The notes under the pieces: generated by a model
The model's database searches: none
The model's input: only the letters and a program-made list of their open reading frames with translations
Told to the model about the DNA's origin: nothing
Program-made: the position numbers and the translations under genes
IMG/VR virus record: IMGVR_UViG_3300032322_001765
Location: 156,868 to 220,867 of that record
Strand: one strand, 5' to 3'
DNA length: 64,000 nt
Part shown: positions 24,226 through 41,670 of the stretch, one piece after another
Layout: each line of letters starts with the position of its first letter
How positions within the stretch are numbered: position 1 is the stretch's first letter

Positions 24226-24302
24226 GCCCCAATAACTCAGTGGACTAGAGTACTGTGCTACGAACGCAGGAGTCGGAGGTTCGAATCCTTCTTGGGGTAC
24301 CA
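24226..24302 (+). tRNA. tRNA-Arg(ACG)
   Basis: Loop CTACGAA, GGTTCGAATCC, CCA. Confidence 0.95.
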
Positions 24303-24308
24303 TTCTTG

Positions 24309-24337
24309 TTGACTAAATACGTTTGCTTGTTTAATAT
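24309..24337 (+). promoter_or_regulatory. Sigma70-type promoter for pqqA
   Basis: TTGACT-17nt-TAATAT. Confidence 0.6.
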
Positions 24338-24362
24338 GAGCGTTCTTATACAGGAGGTAAAC

Positions 24363-24434
24363 ATGTGGACTAAACCTACAGCACAGGATATGCGTTTTGG
24401 TTTTGAAATCACTATGTATATTGCAAATCGCTAA
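24363..24434 (+). CDS. pqqA: PQQ precursor peptide PqqA (23 aa)
   Basis: MWTKPTAQDMRFGFEITMYIANR with ExxxY core; GGAGGT SD; below the ORF-track length cutoff. Confidence 0.95.
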   Translation: MWTKPTAQDMRFGFEITMYIANR

Positions 24435-24452
24435 TATACAACATTGATGGGC

Positions 24453-24479
24453 AAAAAGGTAGCTATGCTACCTTTTTTT
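24453..24479 (+). terminator. Intrinsic terminator after pqqA
   Basis: AAAAAGGTAGC-TAT-GCTACCTTTTT(TT). Confidence 0.85.
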
Positions 24480-24481
24480 AC

Positions 24482-24557
24482 GGTAGAGTAGCATAGCGGC
24501 TAATGCGCCACCTTCATACGGTGTTTATCGTCAGTTCGAGTCTGACCTCTACTACCA
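24482..24557 (+). tRNA. tRNA with CAT anticodon (Met, possibly Ile2)
   Basis: Loop TTCATAC, T arm GTCAG-TTCGAGT-CTGAC, CCA. Confidence 0.85.
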
Positions 24558-24571
24558 ATAAAGGAAATATT

Positions 24572-24724
24572 ATGCCAATGTATGAAACTACTGTTAGAAC
24601 GCCGAGCGGCGAAGAAAAGAAAAGAATTTATGCGGATACACCGCAAGAGGCTAAAAAACTTTTTGAACAATTGTATGGTGGGCCTAGAGCAGTTCCATAT
24701 ATACCAAAAATAGTACCAAGTTAG
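24572..24724 (+). CDS. Hypothetical protein (50 aa)
   Basis: AAGGA SD, MPMYETTVRTPSGEEKKR; ORF-track start 24503 lies inside a tRNA. Confidence 0.7.
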   Translation: MPMYETTVRTPSGEEKKRIYADTPQEAKKLFEQLYGGPRAVPYIPKIVPS

Positions 24725-32979: not shown

Positions 32980-33046
32980 AGTAGGTGAAGCAATTTTTTA
33001 TAGTTTAGTAGCAGTTTTTATTGTGGCATTTTTACTTACTATTTAA
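32972..33046 (+). CDS. Small hydrophobic peptide (24 aa)
   Basis: MYKVGEAIFYSLVAVFIVAFLLTI; AAGGA SD-like site. Confidence 0.4.
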   Translation: MYKVGEAIFYSLVAVFIVAFLLTI

Positions 33047-33049
33047 TAT

Positions 33050-33358
33050 TGTTGTATGAAACAATCCGAAACAGGTTCTGGACGGCGGTTCGATTCCGCC
33101 CATCTCCACCAAATGCAATCTTGGGATGATTATTTTCCGCCTTTGAATTTGTGGAACTATAGTATCAGTTGGCAATGGAAGATTTCATTTGATGGGGATG
33201 ATCAGGTCTCGACAGGGTCAAGAGTACGAGAGTGGACAACACGGTAGGCGATGACCGTAAATCAAGCAAAACTATAACTGCAAACGCAGCTAATGATGAG
33301 GTATACGCTCTAGCAGCGTGATCTCCGGGGCAACTATGCCTTGTTACCAAAAATAGTT
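33050..33358 (+). ncRNA. ssrA: Circularly permuted (two-piece) tmRNA; tag ANAANDEVYALAA
   Basis: 3' end GGTTCGATTCC...CATCTCCACCA (ends 33111) precedes 5' end GGGGATG (33194); G3.U70; tag ORF 33280-33321; outer ends approximate. Confidence 0.9.
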
Positions 33359-33359
33359 T

Positions 33360-33384
33360 AAAAGGCTACTTCGGTAGCCTTTTT
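33360..33384 (+). terminator. Intrinsic terminator
   Basis: AAAAGGCTAC-TTCG-GTAGCCTTTTT. Confidence 0.9.
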
Positions 33385-33403
33385 CCATTATAAATATACT
33401 ATT

Positions 33404-33988
33404 ATGATAGTTTATATACACGGCGCCAGCGCAACTAAAGATAGCTTTTCTTACATTAGACAATTTGTTAGAGATAATATAGAGTTACCTGATATCGCAT
33501 TAGAGTATAACAGTAGTGATGGGTTTGATTATAATATAGGCACTATGTTTGGTAGATTGGATGATGCTGAAAAACTATTTTTCGTTTCGCATAGTTTAGG
33601 TGGCATATACGCATTGCATTTAGCAAATCATTATAAAGATAGAACAATCGGTGGCGTTTCACTAAGTACTCCATACGGTGGATGTAGACAAGCAGATTTT
33701 GCTAGATATTTTTTACCTTTTAATAAGTTAATGAAAGATATTGGAACAATGTCAGATCCAATGATAGAGGCAAAGCGTTTACCTGCTCCTAAAAATTGGA
33801 CTAATGTTGTCACAACAAGAGGAGATAGTCCTTGGATACAAGAACCAAATGATGGAGTGGTTACTATTGAAAGCATGAAGTATCGTGCAGATTTTGAATT
33901 GGTTGAGGCAAATATTAACCATTATGAAGTTGTATTAAATCCAAACATTGTTGAACTTATTTTAGATAGAATTAAAAAAGCAATTTAA
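33404..33988 (+). CDS. Alpha/beta hydrolase
   Basis: YIHG, SHSLGG nucleophile elbow, NDGVV, distal H. Confidence 0.8.
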   Translation: MIVYIHGASATKDSFSYIRQFVRDNIELPDIALEYNSSDGFDYNIGTMFGRLDDAEKLFFVSHSLGGIYALHLANHYKDRTIGGVSLSTPYGGCRQADFARYFLPFNKLMKDIGTMSDPMIEAKRLPAPKNWTNVVTTRGDSPWIQEPNDGVVTIESMKYRADFELVEANINHYEVVLNPNIVELILDRIKKAI

Positions 33989-34030: not shown

Positions 34031-34083
34031 ATTCTAACTTCTAAATATTTTTGTACACATGTACATTTTATCGGAGACAGAGT

Positions 34084-35106
34084 ATGAAAAAAATATTTGC
34101 ATTATTGGCGTTTGTGTCAACATTTGCATCAGCAGCAGAATTCACCGGAGCAGGAGCAACATTCCCGTTCCCAATCTATGCTAAGTGGGCTGAAGCATAC
34201 AAAGCACAAACTGGCATTGGTCTAAATTATCAATCAATTGGTAGTGGCGGTGGTATTCGTCAAATCAAAGCAAAGACGGTTGACTTTGGCGCAAGTGATA
34301 TGCCATTGAAAAAAGAAGAACTTGACAAAGAAGGTCTTGTACAATTTCCAGCAATCATCGGTGGTGTTGTACCAGTATTCAACCTAGACGGTATTGATGC
34401 TGGTAAATTAAAACTTACTCCAGATGTGATTGCTAATATTCATTTAGGTAAAATTAACAAATGGAATGACAAAGCAATTGCTGAATTAAATCCAGGAGTT
34501 GCTCTTCCTGCTATGAACATTACTGTAGTTCATCGTGCAGACGGTTCAGGTACTACATTTATCTGGACAAACTTTTTAGGCAAAGCAAATGCTGAATTTC
34601 AAAAAACAGTAGGCGAAGGCACAGCAGTTAAATGGCCAGTTGGTGTAGGCGGTAAAGGCAACGAAGGTGTAGCAGCACAAGTGCAAAGAATCAAAGGTGC
34701 ATTTGGTTATGTTGAGTATGCTTATGCTAAAAGAAACAAGATTCCTTATGCAGCGTTGAAAAATCGTGATGGTAACTTTGTACTACCAGATGATACTACA
34801 TTCAAAGCAGCCGCAGCTAATGCTGATTGGAACAATGCGCCAGGGATGTATTTGTTACTCACATGGCAGACAGGTAAAGATGCATGGCCAGCAACAGGTG
34901 CAAGTTTCATTCTAATGCACAAGCAACAGGCAGATACATTAACGGGTCGTGCAGTTCTCAAGTTCTTTGACTGGTCATACAAGAATGGTGGCCAAATGTC
35001 AACTGAGTTAGAGTATGTTCACATGCCAGCTGATGTAATTAAATTAGTTCAGGAAAATTGGAAGAAGGATTTCCGTGGTCCTGATGGTAACCCAATTTGG
35101 AAATAA
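34084..35106 (+). CDS. pstS: Phosphate ABC transporter substrate-binding protein PstS
   Basis: Signal peptide; GAGATFP, YQSIGSGGG, FGASD, RADGSGTT, GKGNEGV; GGAGA SD. Confidence 0.95.
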   Translation: MKKIFALLAFVSTFASAAEFTGAGATFPFPIYAKWAEAYKAQTGIGLNYQSIGSGGGIRQIKAKTVDFGASDMPLKKEELDKEGLVQFPAIIGGVVPVFNLDGIDAGKLKLTPDVIANIHLGKINKWNDKAIAELNPGVALPAMNITVVHRADGSGTTFIWTNFLGKANAEFQKTVGEGTAVKWPVGVGGKGNEGVAAQVQRIKGAFGYVEYAYAKRNKIPYAALKNRDGNFVLPDDTTFKAAAANADWNNAPGMYLLLTWQTGKDAWPATGASFILMHKQQADTLTGRAVLKFFDWSYKNGGQMSTELEYVHMPADVIKLVQENWKKDFRGPDGNPIWK

Positions 35107-35110
35107 ACAC

Positions 35111-35139
35111 TTGACAACCGTTAACACTGATGATACAAT
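35111..35139 (+). promoter_or_regulatory. Sigma70-type promoter overlapping an 11-bp inverted repeat
   Basis: TTGACA-17nt-TACAAT; AACCGTTAACA/TGTTAACGGTT plus T tract. Confidence 0.7.
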
Positions 35140-35166
35140 GTTAACGGTTTTTTATAAGGACACACA

Positions 35167-36573
35167 ATGAAAACATTAGGTAAATTAACTTTGGCTATTT
35201 CTTTAGCCTTCTCAGTTCCAGCATATGCTGATGAATATTTGAGTACATTAAATATTTTGCGAGACAAAGGTATCATTACAAAACAAGAGTATGATACTAA
35301 AGTACGTGATTATGAAGAAAAAGCAGAAAACAAAAAATTTGCAGAGCAACGAATCGACAAAGATGTTAGCGATTCAGTCAAATTTAGACAAGCAAGAGCA
35401 AACGACGGATCAGTTACAGAAAACGGATTTGGACTTAAATCCAAAGATGGAAACACGACTGCCCAATTTACAGGTCGATTACATATGGACTATCGTCAGT
35501 ACGACCCCAATTATGGTACAGGTCAAACCACGGATTCGTATCAGAACCTAGCAGAAGTTCGTCGTGCTAGATTTGGCGTACGTGGTCAATTTCAAAAAGA
35601 TTTCAAGTATCAACTACTTGCAAACTTTGGTAATGACGTAGGTGCTTCTGCTACTTCCAGTACCGCAGATGAGATGTGGGTTAACTATGCAGCCAATCCT
35701 GAAATGCAATTTCAGTTTGGTTTATTCAAAATGCCATTCAGCTTAGAGCAATTAACAAGTTCTAATAATATTGATTTTATGGAGCGTAGTTTAATTGGTA
35801 ACACTGATGGTGAGTTCATTCCTGCAAAAGAAACTGGATTCATGGTTCATGGTATACCTAAACCAGGTCTATTGTATCAAGTAGCATTAAGCCGTGGTCG
35901 TGCAAACAAAGATGCAACTAACGATGGTTTTGACTATATTGGTCGTGTAGTAACAAACGTTGCTGAACTACAAGGTAGCAAAGCATATGTATTACATTTA
36001 GGCGCTGCATACAGTATGGGTGATATCAAAGGTGGTGTTACACCAGCTAGTGGTAGAACAGAGGCTCGCACACAGTCAGCATGGTTTACAGGTCCTGCAT
36101 TATCTGGTACCACGACAAGAACTCGCCAAGGATTAGAAGCAGCATTTGCTTACAATGGTTTAAAGTTACAAGGCGAACAGTTTAATTTCAAGTATGATCC
36201 TACAACAGGTTCCGATCAAGAAATTAAAGGTTACTACGTACAAGCATTGTATAACTTAACAGGCGAAAGTCACAATTATAAAGACGGTATCTTTAACTGG
36301 ATTAAACCAAACAATCCAACAGATAAAGGTGGTCGCGGTGCATGGCAAGTTGGTGTGCGTATGAGTGAGTTTGATGCAAGTGGTATCACTGTTGTAACAG
36401 GCAAATCTAATCGTGCTACTGCCATGACATACGGAATTACTTGGTTTGCAACTGACAATTTACGCTTCATGCTCAACTATGTTGACACAAAGTTTGATTC
36501 GTTAGTAGGAAGTTCAGGTAGCCGTGTAAATGGTGACAGAGCAGTTATGTTTAGAAGCCAATTAAGTTTCTAA
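35167..36573 (+). CDS. Phosphate-selective porin, OprO/OprP family
   Basis: Signal peptide; GRLHMD, RRARFGVRG, GLFKMPFSLEQLTSS...FMERS, RYSE-like RMSEFD, C-terminal F. Confidence 0.85.
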   Translation: MKTLGKLTLAISLAFSVPAYADEYLSTLNILRDKGIITKQEYDTKVRDYEEKAENKKFAEQRIDKDVSDSVKFRQARANDGSVTENGFGLKSKDGNTTAQFTGRLHMDYRQYDPNYGTGQTTDSYQNLAEVRRARFGVRGQFQKDFKYQLLANFGNDVGASATSSTADEMWVNYAANPEMQFQFGLFKMPFSLEQLTSSNNIDFMERSLIGNTDGEFIPAKETGFMVHGIPKPGLLYQVALSRGRANKDATNDGFDYIGRVVTNVAELQGSKAYVLHLGAAYSMGDIKGGVTPASGRTEARTQSAWFTGPALSGTTTRTRQGLEAAFAYNGLKLQGEQFNFKYDPTTGSDQEIKGYYVQALYNLTGESHNYKDGIFNWIKPNNPTDKGGRGAWQVGVRMSEFDASGITVVTGKSNRATAMTYGITWFATDNLRFMLNYVDTKFDSLVGSSGSRVNGDRAVMFRSQLSF

Positions 36574-36591
36574 AATTATTTACTGTAAAAC

Positions 36592-36618
36592 AAAAAAGGC
36601 ATTTATATGCCTTTTTTT
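36592..36618 (+). terminator. Intrinsic terminator
   Basis: AAAAAAGGCAT-TTAT-ATGCCTTTTTTT. Confidence 0.85.
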
Positions 36619-36624
36619 GTGGCT

Positions 36625-36642
36625 TTGTAATCGTCTTGTAAC
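36625..36642 (+). promoter_or_regulatory. Second Pho box
   Basis: TTGTAAT-CGTC-TTGTAAC; same 11-nt distance to TAAATA as the pstS box. Confidence 0.6.
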
Positions 36643-36664
36643 ATAAGATATTCTAAATAGTTTT

Positions 36665-37474
36665 ATGAAATCACAATATCGCTCAATTTTTATATCAGAT
36701 ATACATTTAGGTACTAAAGATTGTAAGGCGGAGGCGCTAAACAATTTTTTAAAAAATAATACCTGTGAAATGTTGTATTTGGTTGGCGATATTATTGATG
36801 CATGGAAAATAAAACAAAATAAATGGCGTTGGAAACAAAGTCATACAAATGTTGTACGTAGAATATTAGGTCATGCTAAAAGAAATACTAGAGTAATCTA
36901 CGTGTTAGGAAATCATGATGAGTTTCTAAGACCATTTTTACAATATAATTTAAATTTTGGTATGGTAGAATTACATAACCAAATTGAACATATTGGTGTT
37001 GACGGAAAACATTATCTTGTTGTACATGGGGATTTATTTGATGGTATAACTAGACTTGCACCATGGTTATCTTTTTTAGGAGACAAAGCATATGATTTTA
37101 TCTTATCAGTTAATAGCAAATTTAATTGGTTCTTACATAGAATTGGTTTTGGCTATTTTAGCCTTAGCCGTTTTCTTAAGCACAAAGTAAAAAAAGCAGT
37201 AGATTTTATATTCCAGTTCGAGAAAAACTTAGCAGGTTATTGCAAAAAACGCGGGTTTGATGGTGTGATATGTGGTCACATACATCATGCAGAAATAAAA
37301 GAAATAGACGGTGTTACATACATGAACGATGGTGATTGGGTAGAAAGTTGCACTGCTCTGGTAGAGCATCTAGATGGTAGATGGGAAATTGTAACGTGGG
37401 TGCAGGAGAAAGACGATGTGGTTGATGATATTGATAGCAGTACACATAAGCGATCCAAAGGACATTCCGGGTAA
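36665..37474 (+). CDS. Metallophosphoesterase, PlcP-like phospholipase C (usually annotated UDP-2,3-diacylglucosamine hydrolase)
   Basis: SDIHLGT, LVGDIID, GNHDEFLR, HGDLFD, LGDKAY, SLS..LK.KVKKAV, GVICGHIH, NDGDWVESCTALVE. Confidence 0.75.
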   Translation: MKSQYRSIFISDIHLGTKDCKAEALNNFLKNNTCEMLYLVGDIIDAWKIKQNKWRWKQSHTNVVRRILGHAKRNTRVIYVLGNHDEFLRPFLQYNLNFGMVELHNQIEHIGVDGKHYLVVHGDLFDGITRLAPWLSFLGDKAYDFILSVNSKFNWFLHRIGFGYFSLSRFLKHKVKKAVDFIFQFEKNLAGYCKKRGFDGVICGHIHHAEIKEIDGVTYMNDGDWVESCTALVEHLDGRWEIVTWVQEKDDVVDDIDSSTHKRSKGHSG

Positions 37475-39875: not shown

Positions 39876-40421
39876 ATGAAAACTATCGGAGATAAAGTAG
39901 AAGCATTTGCAGTAACAGGTGTAAAGCCAGGTGCATTGACAGTTGATGGTGCATTTGAAACAATTACAGAAAAAAGTTTTGAAGGTAAGTGGAAAGTAAT
40001 CGTTTACTATCCAAAAGATTTCACATTCGTGTGCCCAACTGAAATCGTAGCATACGACAAATTAAACAGTGACTTTGCAGACCGTGATGCAGTATTGCTT
40101 ATTGGTAGCACAGACAATGAGTTCTGTAAATTAGCATGGCGTAATGCTCATGAAGATTTGAAGAAAACTAATAGCTGGAGTTTTGCTGACGTAGCACGTG
40201 GCGAACTTTCACTAGCAGATCAACTTGGTATTTTCTATGAGCCAGCAGGCGCAGCACTACGTGCAACATTTATTGTTGATCCAGATAATACTATTCAGCA
40301 TGTTACCGTGAACAACCTAGATGTTGGTCGCAACCCAGATGAAACATTACGTATTCTTGACGCACTACAAACAGGTGAACTATGTCCATGTAGTCGTCCA
40401 ATTGGCGGCGAAACACTATAA
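39876..40421 (+). CDS. ahpC: Peroxiredoxin AhpC
   Basis: YYPKDFTFVCPTE, RATFIVDP, GRNPDE. Confidence 0.95.
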   Translation: MKTIGDKVEAFAVTGVKPGALTVDGAFETITEKSFEGKWKVIVYYPKDFTFVCPTEIVAYDKLNSDFADRDAVLLIGSTDNEFCKLAWRNAHEDLKKTNSWSFADVARGELSLADQLGIFYEPAGAALRATFIVDPDNTIQHVTVNNLDVGRNPDETLRILDALQTGELCPCSRPIGGETL

Positions 40422-40431
40422 AAGGAAAATT

Positions 40432-40827
40432 ATGTTAGAGTGCCTTATCTTAGGTGATAGTATAGCAAAAGGTGTTAGTCAAGTTAGACCTGAGTGCGTA
40501 GCTTATGTACAGAGCGGTATCAACAGTTCAGACTATAATAACATTTATAGAAAGAATATAAAATCAGCTAAAACTACAATTATTAGTTTAGGAAGTAATG
40601 ATTTCGATAAACTAAACACTGAAGTAGAATTAATTGCACTACGTTCAAGTGTACGTGAAGGTCGTGTATTTTGGATATTACCTGCTATTAAGCCAGCTAA
40701 ACAAAAAATAGTAACTAGTGTTGCTAGAAGTTACGGAGATACGGTTATTATTATTCCTGAACTATCCAAAGATAAGGTACATCCTACATATCGTGGTTAT
40801 AGACAATTAGGAGAATTGACTAAATGA
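40432..40827 (+). CDS. SGNH/GDSL-like hydrolase
   Basis: LILGDSIA, SLGSND, DKVHP; start at MLECL after AAGGA. Confidence 0.75.
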   Translation: MLECLILGDSIAKGVSQVRPECVAYVQSGINSSDYNNIYRKNIKSAKTTIISLGSNDFDKLNTEVELIALRSSVREGRVFWILPAIKPAKQKIVTSVARSYGDTVIIIPELSKDKVHPTYRGYRQLGELTK

Positions 40828-40895
40828 GTTACAAAGAGTTATTTGACTACTTAAAAAATTATCATTGTCCTAAATGTAAAGGTGAGTCTAAATGA
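40824..40895 (+). CDS. Micro-ORF with CxxC (23 aa)
   Basis: MSYKELFDYLKNYHCPKCKGESK; ATGA overlaps at both ends. Confidence 0.45.
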   Translation: MSYKELFDYLKNYHCPKCKGESK

Positions 40896-41155
40896 GCAAG
40901 GGATCAACTCCTCGACCATATAGTATAAATCAAAATCAATTCGCAGAAAATTGGGACAAAATTTTTAAAAAGGACAAAGATATGCAAGTTCGTGTTAACG
41001 AAGAAATAGGTAGATGTGGATGTGGTCGTAGCCCTACAGGAAGATGTATTGGTTGGCATGGACTAACAGAAGATGAATATCGAATCAAACTAAAAGAATA
41101 TCATGAGTTTGATAAGAAAGTTATTATGAAAAACGAATTTTATGGAGATAATTAA
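40892..41155 (+). CDS. Small protein with CDGSH-like Fe-S/Zn finger
   Basis: CGCGRSPTGRCIGWH. Confidence 0.6.
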   Translation: MSKGSTPRPYSINQNQFAENWDKIFKKDKDMQVRVNEEIGRCGCGRSPTGRCIGWHGLTEDEYRIKLKEYHEFDKKVIMKNEFYGDN

Positions 41156-41157
41156 TA

Positions 41158-41670
41158 ATGAGTTGGATTGAACAAATAAAAGAAGGTCTACCAGAATATG
41201 CTAAAGACACGAAACTTAATCTTGATAACGTTATCAATAGGTCTACACTTGATATTGTTGAAGCTAATGCTATTGCTCTAGCAGCAGCAATGGCTACTGG
41301 TAATGGTAAATTAGTTACATTCATACAGAGTAACATATTAGATGCTACTGAACGTGATGCTGCATTAGCAGCAGGTGCGGTTATGGCACAAAATAATGTT
41401 TGGTATCCATACATTGAAATGGCTGACGATGACAATTTAAAAGGTCTGCCAGCACAATTACGTATGAATACTATTGCAAGCCATGGTGGCACAACTAAAG
41501 CAAGATTTGAAGCATATAGTCTTGCTGCTAGTATAGTTGGTAAATGTCATTTCTGTGTTAAGGCACATTACGAAACTCTTAAAAAAGAGGGCTATACAAT
41601 TGAACAATTGCGTGATATTGGTCGTATTGCAGCAGTAATTAATTCAGTAGCAAAAGTACTAAACAGCTAA
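41158..41670 (+). CDS. ahpD: Alkylhydroperoxidase AhpD
   Basis: MAQNNVWY, YSLAASIVGKCHFCVKAH. Confidence 0.85.
   Translation: MSWIEQIKEGLPEYAKDTKLNLDNVINRSTLDIVEANAIALAAAMATGNGKLVTFIQSNILDATERDAALAAGAVMAQNNVWYPYIEMADDDNLKGLPAQLRMNTIASHGGTTKARFEAYSLAASIVGKCHFCVKAHYETLKKEGYTIEQLRDIGRIAAVINSVAKVLNS

What the first reader, a model, noticed from the sequence alone, without database searches (positions are those of the whole stretch)
24309..24479. Stand-alone pqqA transcription unit hidden in the phage tRNA cluster
Seen: a 23-aa ORF MWTKPTAQDMRFGFEITMYIANR with its own promoter (TTGACT-17-TAATAT), GGAGGT SD and terminator. It is too short for the ORF track. Established: PqqA is the ribosomal precursor whose ExxxY Glu and Tyr are cross-linked by PqqE/PqqD to make PQQ, the cofactor of methanol/alcohol/glucose dehydrogenases, and it is consumed stoichiometrically. 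No pqqB/C/D/E is recognisable here. Inference: the phage supplies the consumable precursor to the host pathway to sustain periplasmic oxidation during infection, which points to a PQQ-using host. I recall pqqA being noted in freshwater viral metagenomes, so novelty needs checking.
Basis: partly seen in the sequence, partly recalled or inferred. Interest (0 to 1): 0.85.

Follow-up and report, generated by a model that had tools for sequence, protein, structure and literature searches.

The report
Phage-borne PQQ precursor gene pqqA
A 221-kb phage genome carries a real, selectively maintained copy of pqqA, the tiny peptide that bacteria turn into the cofactor PQQ, without the enzymes that process it; this is genuine but was already reported for phages of methanol-eating bacteria in 2020.

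Summary
Window 24363-24434 (+) encodes a 23-residue peptide that passes both curated PqqA models (TIGR02107 39.5 bits, cut-off 20; PF08042 37.4, cut-off 21.1). It has the Glu15-x3-Tyr19 pair, a GGAGGT Shine-Dalgarno and a hairpin terminator. The proposed promoter is only a 9-of-12 match, no better than chance.

The gene is stand-alone. PqqB, PqqC, PqqD and PqqE are absent from the 93 kb of contig examined. The 13 neighbouring radical-SAM enzymes are not PqqE.

The contig is catalogued in IMG/VR as a 220,867-bp viral genome. Its nearest cultured relatives are jumbo phages.

Lone pqqA is common in viruses: at least 120 IMG/VR contigs carry it, against 1 with PqqC and 3 with PqqB. It also occurs, unannotated, in cultured Methylophilales phages (Melnitz, Venkman, MEP301/401/402, P19250A). 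Selection is purifying: 6-8 synonymous and no non-synonymous changes against three loci encoding the same peptide.

This PqqA subtype belongs to methylotrophs, and the phage tmRNA is of the betaproteobacterial type.

Supplying precursor to the host's PqqD/E/B/C is the best explanation but is untested. Coutinho et al. 2020 (Microbiome 8:163) already proposed it, so this is a new member of a known kind.

The parts
24226..24302 (+). tRNA-Arg(ACG), upstream neighbour; its 3' processing would define the 5' end of a pqqA transcript if the cassette is co-transcribed with the tRNA array
   Evidence: ARAGORN; Rfam tRNA 58.6 bits. The role in processing is inference.
24309..24337 (+). Sigma-70-like promoter candidate TTGACT-17-TAATAT (unproven)
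   Evidence: 9/12 match. The region has 8 such sites against 6.0 +/- 2.4 in shuffles. It is not alignable in related cassettes.
24353..24358 (+). Shine-Dalgarno GGAGGT, 4 nt before the ATG
   Evidence: Read from the sequence. An AGGAG/GGAGG element lies at the same distance in all 10 other viral cassettes inspected.
24363..24434 (+). pqqA coding sequence, 23 codons plus TAA; Glu15 and Tyr19 are the cross-linked pair
   Evidence: Translation. TIGR02107 39.5 bits against cut-off 20, full model 1-21/21. PF08042 37.4 bits against 21.1. 6-8 synonymous and 0 non-synonymous differences to L015, L033 and L102.
24453..24479 (+). Intrinsic-terminator-like hairpin (11 bp, 3-nt loop) running into a 7-T tract; it ends 3 nt before tRNA-Met
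   Evidence: RNA fold -12.7 kcal/mol, z -3.2. Non-homologous GC-rich hairpins followed by T-runs follow pqqA in 6 of the 10 other cassettes (L015, L101, L092, L014, L115, L068).
24482..24557 (+). tRNA-Met(CAT), downstream neighbour
   Evidence: ARAGORN; Rfam.

Best explanation
This is a functional, phage-resident copy of pqqA, carried as a compact cassette (ribosome-binding site, 23-codon ORF, terminator hairpin) inside the tRNA array of a jumbo phage of at least 221 kb. The phage probably infects a PQQ-making betaproteobacterial methylotroph. SHOWN: the peptide meets the curated PqqA models and has the Glu-x3-Tyr pair. It stands alone, with no pqqB/C/D/E. The same lone gene recurs in many unrelated phages of methylotrophs. 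It evolves under purifying selection. INFERRED: during infection the peptide is translated, bound by the host chaperone PqqD and cross-linked at Glu15-Tyr19 by host PqqE. It is then trimmed, hydroxylated by PqqB and oxidised by PqqC to PQQ. One peptide is consumed per cofactor, whereas the enzymes are reusable. A phage that shuts down host transcription therefore needs to replace only the consumable precursor to keep periplasmic methanol or alcohol dehydrogenases (XoxF/MxaF type) loaded and energy flowing. The logic matches cyanophage psbA, which replaces the fast-turnover D1 protein. The transcript may come from the weak promoter-like site, or be cut out of the tRNA precursor with the hairpin protecting its 3' end.
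For: Family membership. Single copy and not chance. Viral origin: the contig is IMGVR_UViG_3300032322_001765, 220,867 bp; the best cultured homologues are in jumbo phages RsoM2USA and PA5oct-like; a PHROG tail-fibre hit, two HNH endonucleases and a 27-tRNA array are present. Stand-alone status: there are no Pqq biosynthesis or PQQ-dehydrogenase domains in any ORF of 150 aa or more in the window, nor among the called genes of record 128,078-156,867. The best PqqE score among ten of the 13 radical-SAM proteins is 28.5 bits against a cut-off of 381. Verified PqqB/C/D/E probes give no hit in the window or in 121 viral loci, apart from E ~1e-3 generic radical-SAM similarity, yet hit 24-38 of 120 bacterial loci strongly. 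Generality: at least 120 IMG/VR contigs carry pqqA, among phage genes such as T4 portal, gp23, RegA, terminase, ERF, Sak, YqaJ and lysozyme. By contrast PqqC is on 1 contig, PqqB on 3 and the MDH motif on 1. Ten cultured or environmental Methylophilales-type phage records carry it. Selection. Conserved SD-plus-hairpin architecture with unalignable flanks. Host link: the commonest viral peptide is identical to the PqqA of 33 Methylophilaceae loci, the subtype is almost confined to methylotrophs, and the tmRNA is the beta type. Premise: methylotrophs have several pqqA copies, stand-alone ones included; one stand-alone copy is highly expressed and tracks the PQQ synthesis rate; added PqqA is converted to PQQ by cell extract (PMC9851590). 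Same interpretation in print: PMC7678222.
Against: There are no expression, peptide or PQQ measurements for any phage pqqA. The promoter is not above chance. About 118 kb of the contig was not read directly; it was covered only by motif-based IMG/VR scans. Whether PqqA supply limits PQQ in the natural host is unknown. OM43 hosts are cultured with added PQQ (PMC9004378).
Confidence: 0.7

Rival explanations
1. Decoy or inhibitor. The phage peptide occupies host PqqD/PqqE without yielding PQQ, or floods the pathway, shutting down host periplasmic oxidation rather than sustaining it.
For: The window's allele differs from every bacterial copy sampled at positions 6-8 and elsewhere. Nothing here shows that it is turned over.
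Against: All family-defining residues are intact. On 28 other viral contigs the phage peptide is identical, residue for residue, to the Methylophilaceae PqqA; that is what a substrate would look like, not an inhibitor. Killing the energy supply would not obviously help a lytic phage.
Confidence: 0.06
2. Substrate of the phage's own enzymes. One of the 13 phage radical-SAM proteins, some with SPASM or twitch domains, modifies this peptide into PQQ or into a different cross-linked product.
For: There are 11 radical-SAM ORFs within 23 kb upstream, 2 more beyond, and Fe-S assembly genes. Coutinho et al. suggested that phage radical-SAM proteins boost PQQ synthesis.
Against: None of the ten tested approaches the PqqE equivalog (at most 28.5 bits against 381). 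There is no PqqD or RRE-type match. No homologue of these radical-SAM genes lies near pqqA in the other 120 viral loci, most of them from small phages. The cluster is on the opposite strand and separated from pqqA by other genes.
Confidence: 0.05
3. Cellular or prophage DNA. The contig is a misassigned bacterial fragment or an integrated element, and pqqA is just one of the host's orphan copies.
For: Orphan pqqA copies are common in host genomes; only 16 of 126 are followed by pqqB/C-sized genes. Records labelled 'Acinetobacter phage MD-2021a' proved to be cellular pqqABCDE DNA. About 118 kb of the contig was not read.
Against: IMG/VR lists the contig as viral. It has jumbo-phage homologues. 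It carries a 27-tRNA plus tmRNA array interrupted by HNH endonucleases, a tail fibre and a PAAR protein, and no ribosomal or other cellular core genes in 93 kb. GC is 31-40%. Cultured lytic phages carry the same gene.
Confidence: 0.04
4. Other role for the peptide, for example in phage-host or phage-phage conflict, unrelated to cofactor supply.
For: One metatranscriptome study saw a PqqA-annotated RiPP family co-expressed with defence systems (PMC11118758).
Against: That is a correlation in bacterial loci only. The distribution of viral pqqA follows methylotroph hosts, for which PQQ is central.
Confidence: 0.05
5. Chance ORF or decaying hitchhiker picked up with host tRNA genes.
For: It is only 23 codons long and lies among tRNAs.
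Against: E = 3.3e-10 to the equivalog model. There are no non-synonymous changes against pS of 0.46-0.61. No matches are expected by chance. The SD and terminator architecture is conserved.
Confidence: 0.01

Closest known systems
PqqA of bacterial pqqABCDE(F) operons (TIGR02107 / PF08042), e.g. in Methylophilaceae, Methylophaga, Klebsiella, Methylorubrum
   Same: It has the same length class, the W-x-K-P leader, the R-x-G-x-E-[IV]-T-x-Y core and the Glu/Tyr pair. It scores above both curated cut-offs and aligns without gaps to 38 distinct bacterial peptides.
   Different: It is encoded in a phage, with no pqqB-E in cis. This exact allele was seen only on viral contigs: the window's contig with its 127-kb sibling, and L015, L033 and L102.
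Orphan (stand-alone) extra pqqA copies of methylotrophs, e.g. pqqA3-5 of Hyphomicrobium denitrificans and the five copies of Methylovorus sp. MP688
   Same: These are lone pqqA genes away from the operon, and some are highly expressed (PMC9851590). In my sample of host loci only 16 of 126 copies are followed by pqqB/C-sized genes.
   Different: Those copies are chromosomal and share the cell with their own operon. Here the copy arrives with the virus.
Phage PqqA reported in Lake Baikal T4-like Methylophilaceae phages, population VP_266 (Coutinho et al. 2020, Microbiome 8:163)
   Same: The gene, the host guild, the roughly 35% GC, the co-occurring radical-SAM proteins and the proposed role as an auxiliary metabolic gene supporting methanol oxidation are all the same.
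   Different: The Baikal phages also carry methanol dehydrogenase; no MDH was found on this contig. The paper linked phage radical-SAM proteins to PQQ synthesis; here they fail the PqqE test. I could not compare sequences with VP_266.
Unannotated pqqA in cultured Methylophilales phages Melnitz, Venkman, MEP301, MEP401/402 and P19250A
   Same: The peptides are 65-77% identical and stand alone. In Melnitz the gene also lies directly next to a tRNA gene.
   Different: Those genomes are 35-142 kb phages of other lineages. The gene is not annotated, or in Melnitz is called on the wrong strand. It is not mentioned in the four isolate papers I could read.
Cyanophage psbA (D1) as a model auxiliary metabolic gene
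   Same: The logic is the same: the virus carries only the rapidly consumed component of a host energy system.
   Different: The pathway is different. psbA function during infection has been shown experimentally (my own knowledge); pqqA function has not.

Membership tests
PqqA (TIGR02107 equivalog / Pfam PF08042) | Score above the curated model cut-offs over the full model | tested here: met
   TIGR02107 39.5 bits against 20, model positions 1-21/21. PF08042 37.4 bits against 21.1, positions 1-19/19.
PqqA (TIGR02107 equivalog / Pfam PF08042) | Small ribosomal peptide of about 20-40 residues with conserved Glu-x-x-x-Tyr, the two residues that become PQQ | tested here: met
   23 residues, with Glu15-Ile-Thr-Met-Tyr19. 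Both positions are invariant in 99 distinct viral alleles, though the search pattern required them.
PqqA (TIGR02107 equivalog / Pfam PF08042) | N-terminal W-x-K-P leader segment (taken as the PqqD-binding part from my own knowledge of the literature) | tested here: met
   W2-T-K4-P5 is present, matching the 38 distinct bacterial peptides sampled.
PqqA (TIGR02107 equivalog / Pfam PF08042) | Genomic linkage to pqqB/C/D/E | tested here: not met
   Absent in cis. This is not strictly defining: only 16 of 126 bacterial copies sampled are followed by pqqB/C-sized genes, and stand-alone copies are documented.
PqqA (TIGR02107 equivalog / Pfam PF08042) | Conversion to PQQ by PqqD/PqqE/PqqB/PqqC | not testable with these tools
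   Needs complementation or in vitro cross-linking.
Viral auxiliary metabolic gene | Encoded on a true virus genome, not on cellular contamination | tested here: met
   IMG/VR entry of 220,867 bp; jumbo-phage homologues; phage-type content over 93 kb. 118 kb was not read directly.
Viral auxiliary metabolic gene | Host homologue with a metabolic role, maintained by purifying selection in viruses | tested here: met
   Viral peptides are identical to host peptides on 28 contigs. pN/pS is 0.16 overall, and the window has 0 non-synonymous against 6-8 synonymous changes to three loci. The overall ratio is biased by the search pattern.
Viral auxiliary metabolic gene | Expressed during infection and changes host metabolism | not testable with these tools
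   No transcriptome or PQQ data. The SD and terminator are present; the promoter is unproven.
PqqE (TIGR02109), considered for the neighbouring radical-SAM proteins | Equivalog score of at least 381.35 bits, with a PqqD partner | tested here: not met
   The best of ten phage radical-SAM proteins scores 28.5 bits, against control PqqE scores of 559.6 and 520.7. There is no PqqD match.

The most novel reading that the evidence does not exclude
The phage-specific PqqA allele is processed not, or not only, by the host pathway but by the phage's own battery of 13 radical-SAM enzymes with Fe-S assembly genes. That would yield PQQ independently of host PqqE, or a new cross-linked peptide product, and would make this a phage-encoded peptide-maturation system.
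Probability: 0.05. Interest if true: 0.8.

Novelty: new member of a known kind. Interest (0 to 1): 0.35.

Why it matters
PQQ is the cofactor of the methanol and alcohol dehydrogenases that feed energy to methylotrophs such as OM43 and LD28, which are abundant in coastal seas and lakes.

If phages top up the one consumable ingredient of PQQ synthesis, they steer a step of the aquatic C1 cycle. That would be the smallest known auxiliary metabolic gene.

What this work adds to the published idea:
- The gene is frequent in viruses while the rest of the pathway is almost absent (at least 120 contigs against 1-3).
- It sits unannotated in phages that are already in culture, so the hypothesis can be tested directly.
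- Phage radical-SAM proteins should not be read as PQQ enzymes.
- A 23-codon gene is easily missed, or called on the wrong strand, by standard annotation.

Tried and rejected
1. My first family and tblastn queries (and the second protein) used 24364 as the start. They were out of frame, so their empty results are void; I repeated them in frame.

2. The search for homologous proteins and the search for related loci refuse a 23-residue query. I used degenerate DNA patterns instead.

3. Megablast of the locus against phages found only tRNA-Gln similarity.

4. Walking the source contig upstream stopped at a 4,525-residue gene longer than the maximum flank. I covered the rest indirectly with IMG/VR-wide PqqB, PqqC and MDH scans.

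5. The automatic XoxF scan chose poorly conserved N-terminal patterns and found nothing. I repeated it with the invariant propeller motif.

6. No solved structure matches the peptide.

7. No paper mentions the sample number, so the environment is unknown.

8. Genus-level host prediction from the peptide is rejected.

9. The 'Acinetobacter phage' pqqA hits are rejected as phage examples: they are cellular pqqABCDE operons.

10. A general tRNA-cluster association is rejected: only 8 of 121 viral loci have any tRNA.

Full report
OBSERVATION

The ATG is at 24363 and the stop at 24432-24434, and the ORF translates to the 23-residue peptide quoted. My first searches started one base late, so they were out of frame. 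The empty results and the second query mean nothing.

In frame, the peptide matches the NCBIfam equivalog TIGR02107 (PqqA) over the whole model at 39.5 bits, cut-off 20, E = 3.3e-10. It matches Pfam PF08042 at 37.4 bits, cut-off 21.1. It carries the W-x-K-P leader and the Glu15-x3-Tyr19 pair. A degenerate back-translation of the PqqA core matches once in the 64 kb, with none expected from shuffles.

GGAGGT lies 4 nt before the ATG. Seventeen bases after the stop there is an 11-bp hairpin that runs into seven T residues: -12.7 kcal/mol, z = -3.2. The proposed promoter exists, but it is a 9-of-12 match in AT-rich DNA where such matches are as common as in shuffled sequence. I therefore treat 'own promoter' as unproven.

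The cassette lies between tRNA-Arg(ACG) and tRNA-Met, in a same-strand array of 27 tRNAs followed by a tmRNA. The source annotation called neighbouring 50-54-residue ORFs but nothing here.

WHAT THE WINDOW IS

An exact-protein look-up places the window at positions 156,868-220,867 of a 220,867-bp JGI metagenome contig. The same contig is in IMG/VR as IMGVR_UViG_3300032322_001765, with a 127-kb sibling.

GC is 31-40%. The content is that of a large aquatic phage's accessory region:
- a PHROG tail fibre, HNH endonucleases and thymidylate synthase;
- PstS, a phosphate porin, AhpC and a MoxR-type ATPase;
- further upstream, ribonucleotide reductase, a PAAR protein, a cell-wall hydrolase and a 4,525-residue repeat protein.

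The nearest cultured homologues of two tested proteins are in jumbo phages. One matches only Ralstonia phage RsoM2USA. The other is 50.7% identical to Pseudomonas phage PA5oct and its relatives. About 118 kb of the contig could not be read, because the giant gene is longer than the largest flank the look-up allows.

IS pqqA REALLY ALONE?

This needed care. The 23 kb upstream holds 11 radical-SAM genes and the next 10 kb two more, together with IscA and NifU Fe-S assembly genes. PqqE is itself a radical-SAM/SPASM enzyme.

Ten of the 13 were scored against the curated models. The best PqqE score was 28.5 bits against a cut-off of 381; two belong to the uncharacterised twitch-domain family NF033640.

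As a control I took PqqB, C, D and E from two bacterial operons found here and confirmed each with its equivalog model, for example PqqE at 559.6 bits. Used as tblastn probes, they gave nothing in the window or in 121 phage and viral loci, apart from E ~1e-3 generic radical-SAM similarity. The same probes hit 24-38 of 120 bacterial loci strongly.

Alignment-based scans of all 2.9 million IMG/VR contigs found PqqC on one contig and PqqB on three. None was the window's contig. An invariant methanol-dehydrogenase motif was found on one unrelated contig. These scans depend on motifs, but they do cover the unread part of the contig.

HOW GENERAL IS IT?

tblastn found PqqA-like ORFs in twelve phage-database records:
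- four Melnitz genomes;
- Venkman, MEP301, MEP401, MEP402 and P19250A;
- one spring-water contig;
- two records labelled 'Acinetobacter phage MD-2021a'.

The last two are ordinary pqqABCDE operons next to ppk, so they are cellular DNA. In Melnitz the ORF lies 14 bases before a tRNA-Leu gene, and a CDS has been called over it on the wrong strand.

Their recurrent neighbours are phage genes of at least two kinds. One group has T4-type portal, gp23, RegA and terminase. The other has ERF, Sak, YqaJ, lysozyme and holin. No Pqq family appears among them.

Only 8 of the 121 loci contain any tRNA, so the tRNA neighbourhood belongs to a few large phages and is not general.

The window's relatives place the cassette differently:
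- L015 (25 tRNAs, proteins 66-74% identical to the window's) has it inverted within the tRNA array.
- L101 (proteins 47-75% identical) has it directly after the CMD gene.
- L102 has it next to the tmRNA.

Across ten other cassettes the flanks cannot be aligned. Yet every one has an AGGAG-type ribosome-binding site, and six have a GC-rich hairpin followed by a T-run. It behaves like a small, self-contained, movable gene.

SELECTION

The window's allele differs from L015, L033 and L102 by 8, 7 and 6 synonymous changes and by no non-synonymous change (pS 0.46-0.61). Over all 99 distinct 23-codon alleles, pN/pS is 0.16. The overall ratio is flattered, because the search pattern fixed about ten residues. 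The three identical-peptide comparisons also hold at the free positions.

HOST

A stricter pattern, K-P-x3-[DE]-M-R-F-G-F-E-[IV]-T-M-Y, in one genome per species returned almost only methylotrophs:
- Methylophilus, Methylotenera, Methylovorus, Methylobacillus and Ca. Methylopumilus;
- Methylophaga;

The commonest viral peptide, on 28 contigs, is identical to that of 33 Methylophilaceae loci.

The window's own peptide was not in the bacterial sample. From K-P onward its closest relative (18/20) is a Polaromonas/Rhodoferax type, while its N-terminus is the Methylophilaceae/Methylophaga form. The phage tmRNA is the betaproteobacterial two-piece type, RF01850 at 137 bits against 84.

I conclude that the host is a PQQ-making betaproteobacterium, most likely a low-GC methylotroph of the Methylophilaceae. 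I hold the genus open.

MECHANISM

Established knowledge of the pathway, from Klinman and co-workers as cited references 50-51, gives this order:
1. PqqD binds PqqA.
2. PqqE links Glu to Tyr.
3. Proteases trim the peptide.
4. PqqB hydroxylates it.
5. PqqC completes PQQ.

One peptide is consumed per cofactor, while the enzymes turn over. Methylotrophs keep several pqqA copies, including stand-alone ones. One stand-alone copy is among the most highly expressed and follows the PQQ synthesis rate, and cell extract converts added PqqA to PQQ (PMC9851590). In my host sample only 16 of 126 copies are followed by pqqB/C-sized genes.

The best-supported reading is therefore that the phage replaces the consumable precursor, so that host enzymes keep making PQQ for periplasmic dehydrogenases while host transcription declines. 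The steps from translation onward are inferred. I put this at about 0.7. The rivals and their weights are:
- decoy or inhibitor, 0.06;
- substrate of the phage's own radical-SAM enzymes, 0.05;
- another role for the peptide, 0.05;
- cellular contamination, 0.04;
- chance ORF, 0.01.

No homologue of the window's radical-SAM genes lies beside pqqA in any other viral locus. That counts against a functional link between the two.

COMPARISON AND NOVELTY

Coutinho et al. 2020 (PMC7678222) described T4-like Methylophilaceae phages from Lake Baikal with about 35% GC. They carried PqqA, radical-SAM proteins and methanol dehydrogenase, and the authors proposed that the phages boost PQQ and methanol oxidation.

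Three points go beyond that paper:
- The imbalance between pqqA and the rest of the pathway across IMG/VR.
- The presence of pqqA in cultured Methylophilales phages. Four isolate papers do not mention it, and in the Melnitz paper PQQ appears only as a medium supplement. I could not read the P19250A paper.
- The failure of the phage radical-SAM proteins to qualify as PqqE.

VERDICT

The feature is real and correctly interpreted, but already known in kind. Interest is 0.35. Most of that comes from the hypothesis now being testable in existing phage-host cultures, and from the unexplained radical-SAM cluster next door.

Noticed in passing
window 698-21819 (mostly - strand), continuing upstream in L243 11092-15425 (record about 153.2-157.6 kb): A cluster of 13 radical-SAM genes. 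Two have the HMPTM zinc ribbon, three have B12-binding domains, two are twitch-domain NF033640 members and one has a C-terminal SPASM. They sit with methyltransferases, class III and V aminotransferases, an Asp/Asn hydroxylase-like protein, and IscA and NifU Fe-S assembly genes. None is PqqE. The product is unknown, and the cluster is unusually large for a phage.
   Followed up: partly
window 33007-33412 (+): A permuted two-piece tmRNA of the betaproteobacterial type (RF01850, 137 bits; tag peptide ANAANDEVYALAA) at the end of the tRNA array. Melnitz, by contrast, carries an alphaproteobacterial-type tmRNA.
   Followed up: partly
window 34051-37474 (+): A phosphate-acquisition set: PstS-like binding protein, phosphate-selective porin O/P and a metallophosphoesterase, directly after the tmRNA.
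   Followed up: no
window 24573-24724 (+): A 50-residue ORF between tRNA-Met and tRNA-Ala. It was called in the source annotation and is 66% identical in the related contig L015. Function unknown.
   Followed up: no
L001 5995-6069 (MZ577095.1 74882-74956): In the Melnitz genomes the pqqA ORF is not annotated. A hypothetical CDS (Melnitz1EXVC043M_151) is called over it on the opposite strand. In Venkman, MEP301, MEP401/402 and P19250A nothing is annotated at the site.
   Followed up: partly
L247 (CAKLQF020000010.1 104210-112275): Records named 'Acinetobacter phage MD-2021a' contain a normal ppk-pqqABCDE chromosomal region, so they are probably cellular DNA or a prophage-flanking assembly filed as phage.
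   Followed up: partly
L245 1-3827 (record about 118.3-131.9 kb): A 4,525-residue protein made of RCC1/WD40-like repeats, next to glycosyltransferase and methyltransferase genes.
   Followed up: no
L169 4689-6464, L215 871-2646, L239 4517-6292: In Methylophaga and Methylovorus genomes a XoxF-type lanthanide methanol dehydrogenase (721 bits to PDB 6oc5) lies within a few kb of a pqqA copy. Most bacterial pqqA copies sampled are orphans.
   Followed up: partly
L254 (IMGVR_UViG_3300048670_001593, 78.7 kb): The only IMG/VR contig with the invariant methanol-dehydrogenase propeller motif. It may be a phage-borne MDH like those reported from Lake Baikal.
   Followed up: no
window 39876-41670 (+) and L101 738-2373: An AhpC-type peroxiredoxin and a CMD-family (alkylhydroperoxidase-like) gene pair is conserved at 72-75% identity in a 163-kb relative. 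In that relative pqqA follows the pair directly.
   Followed up: partly
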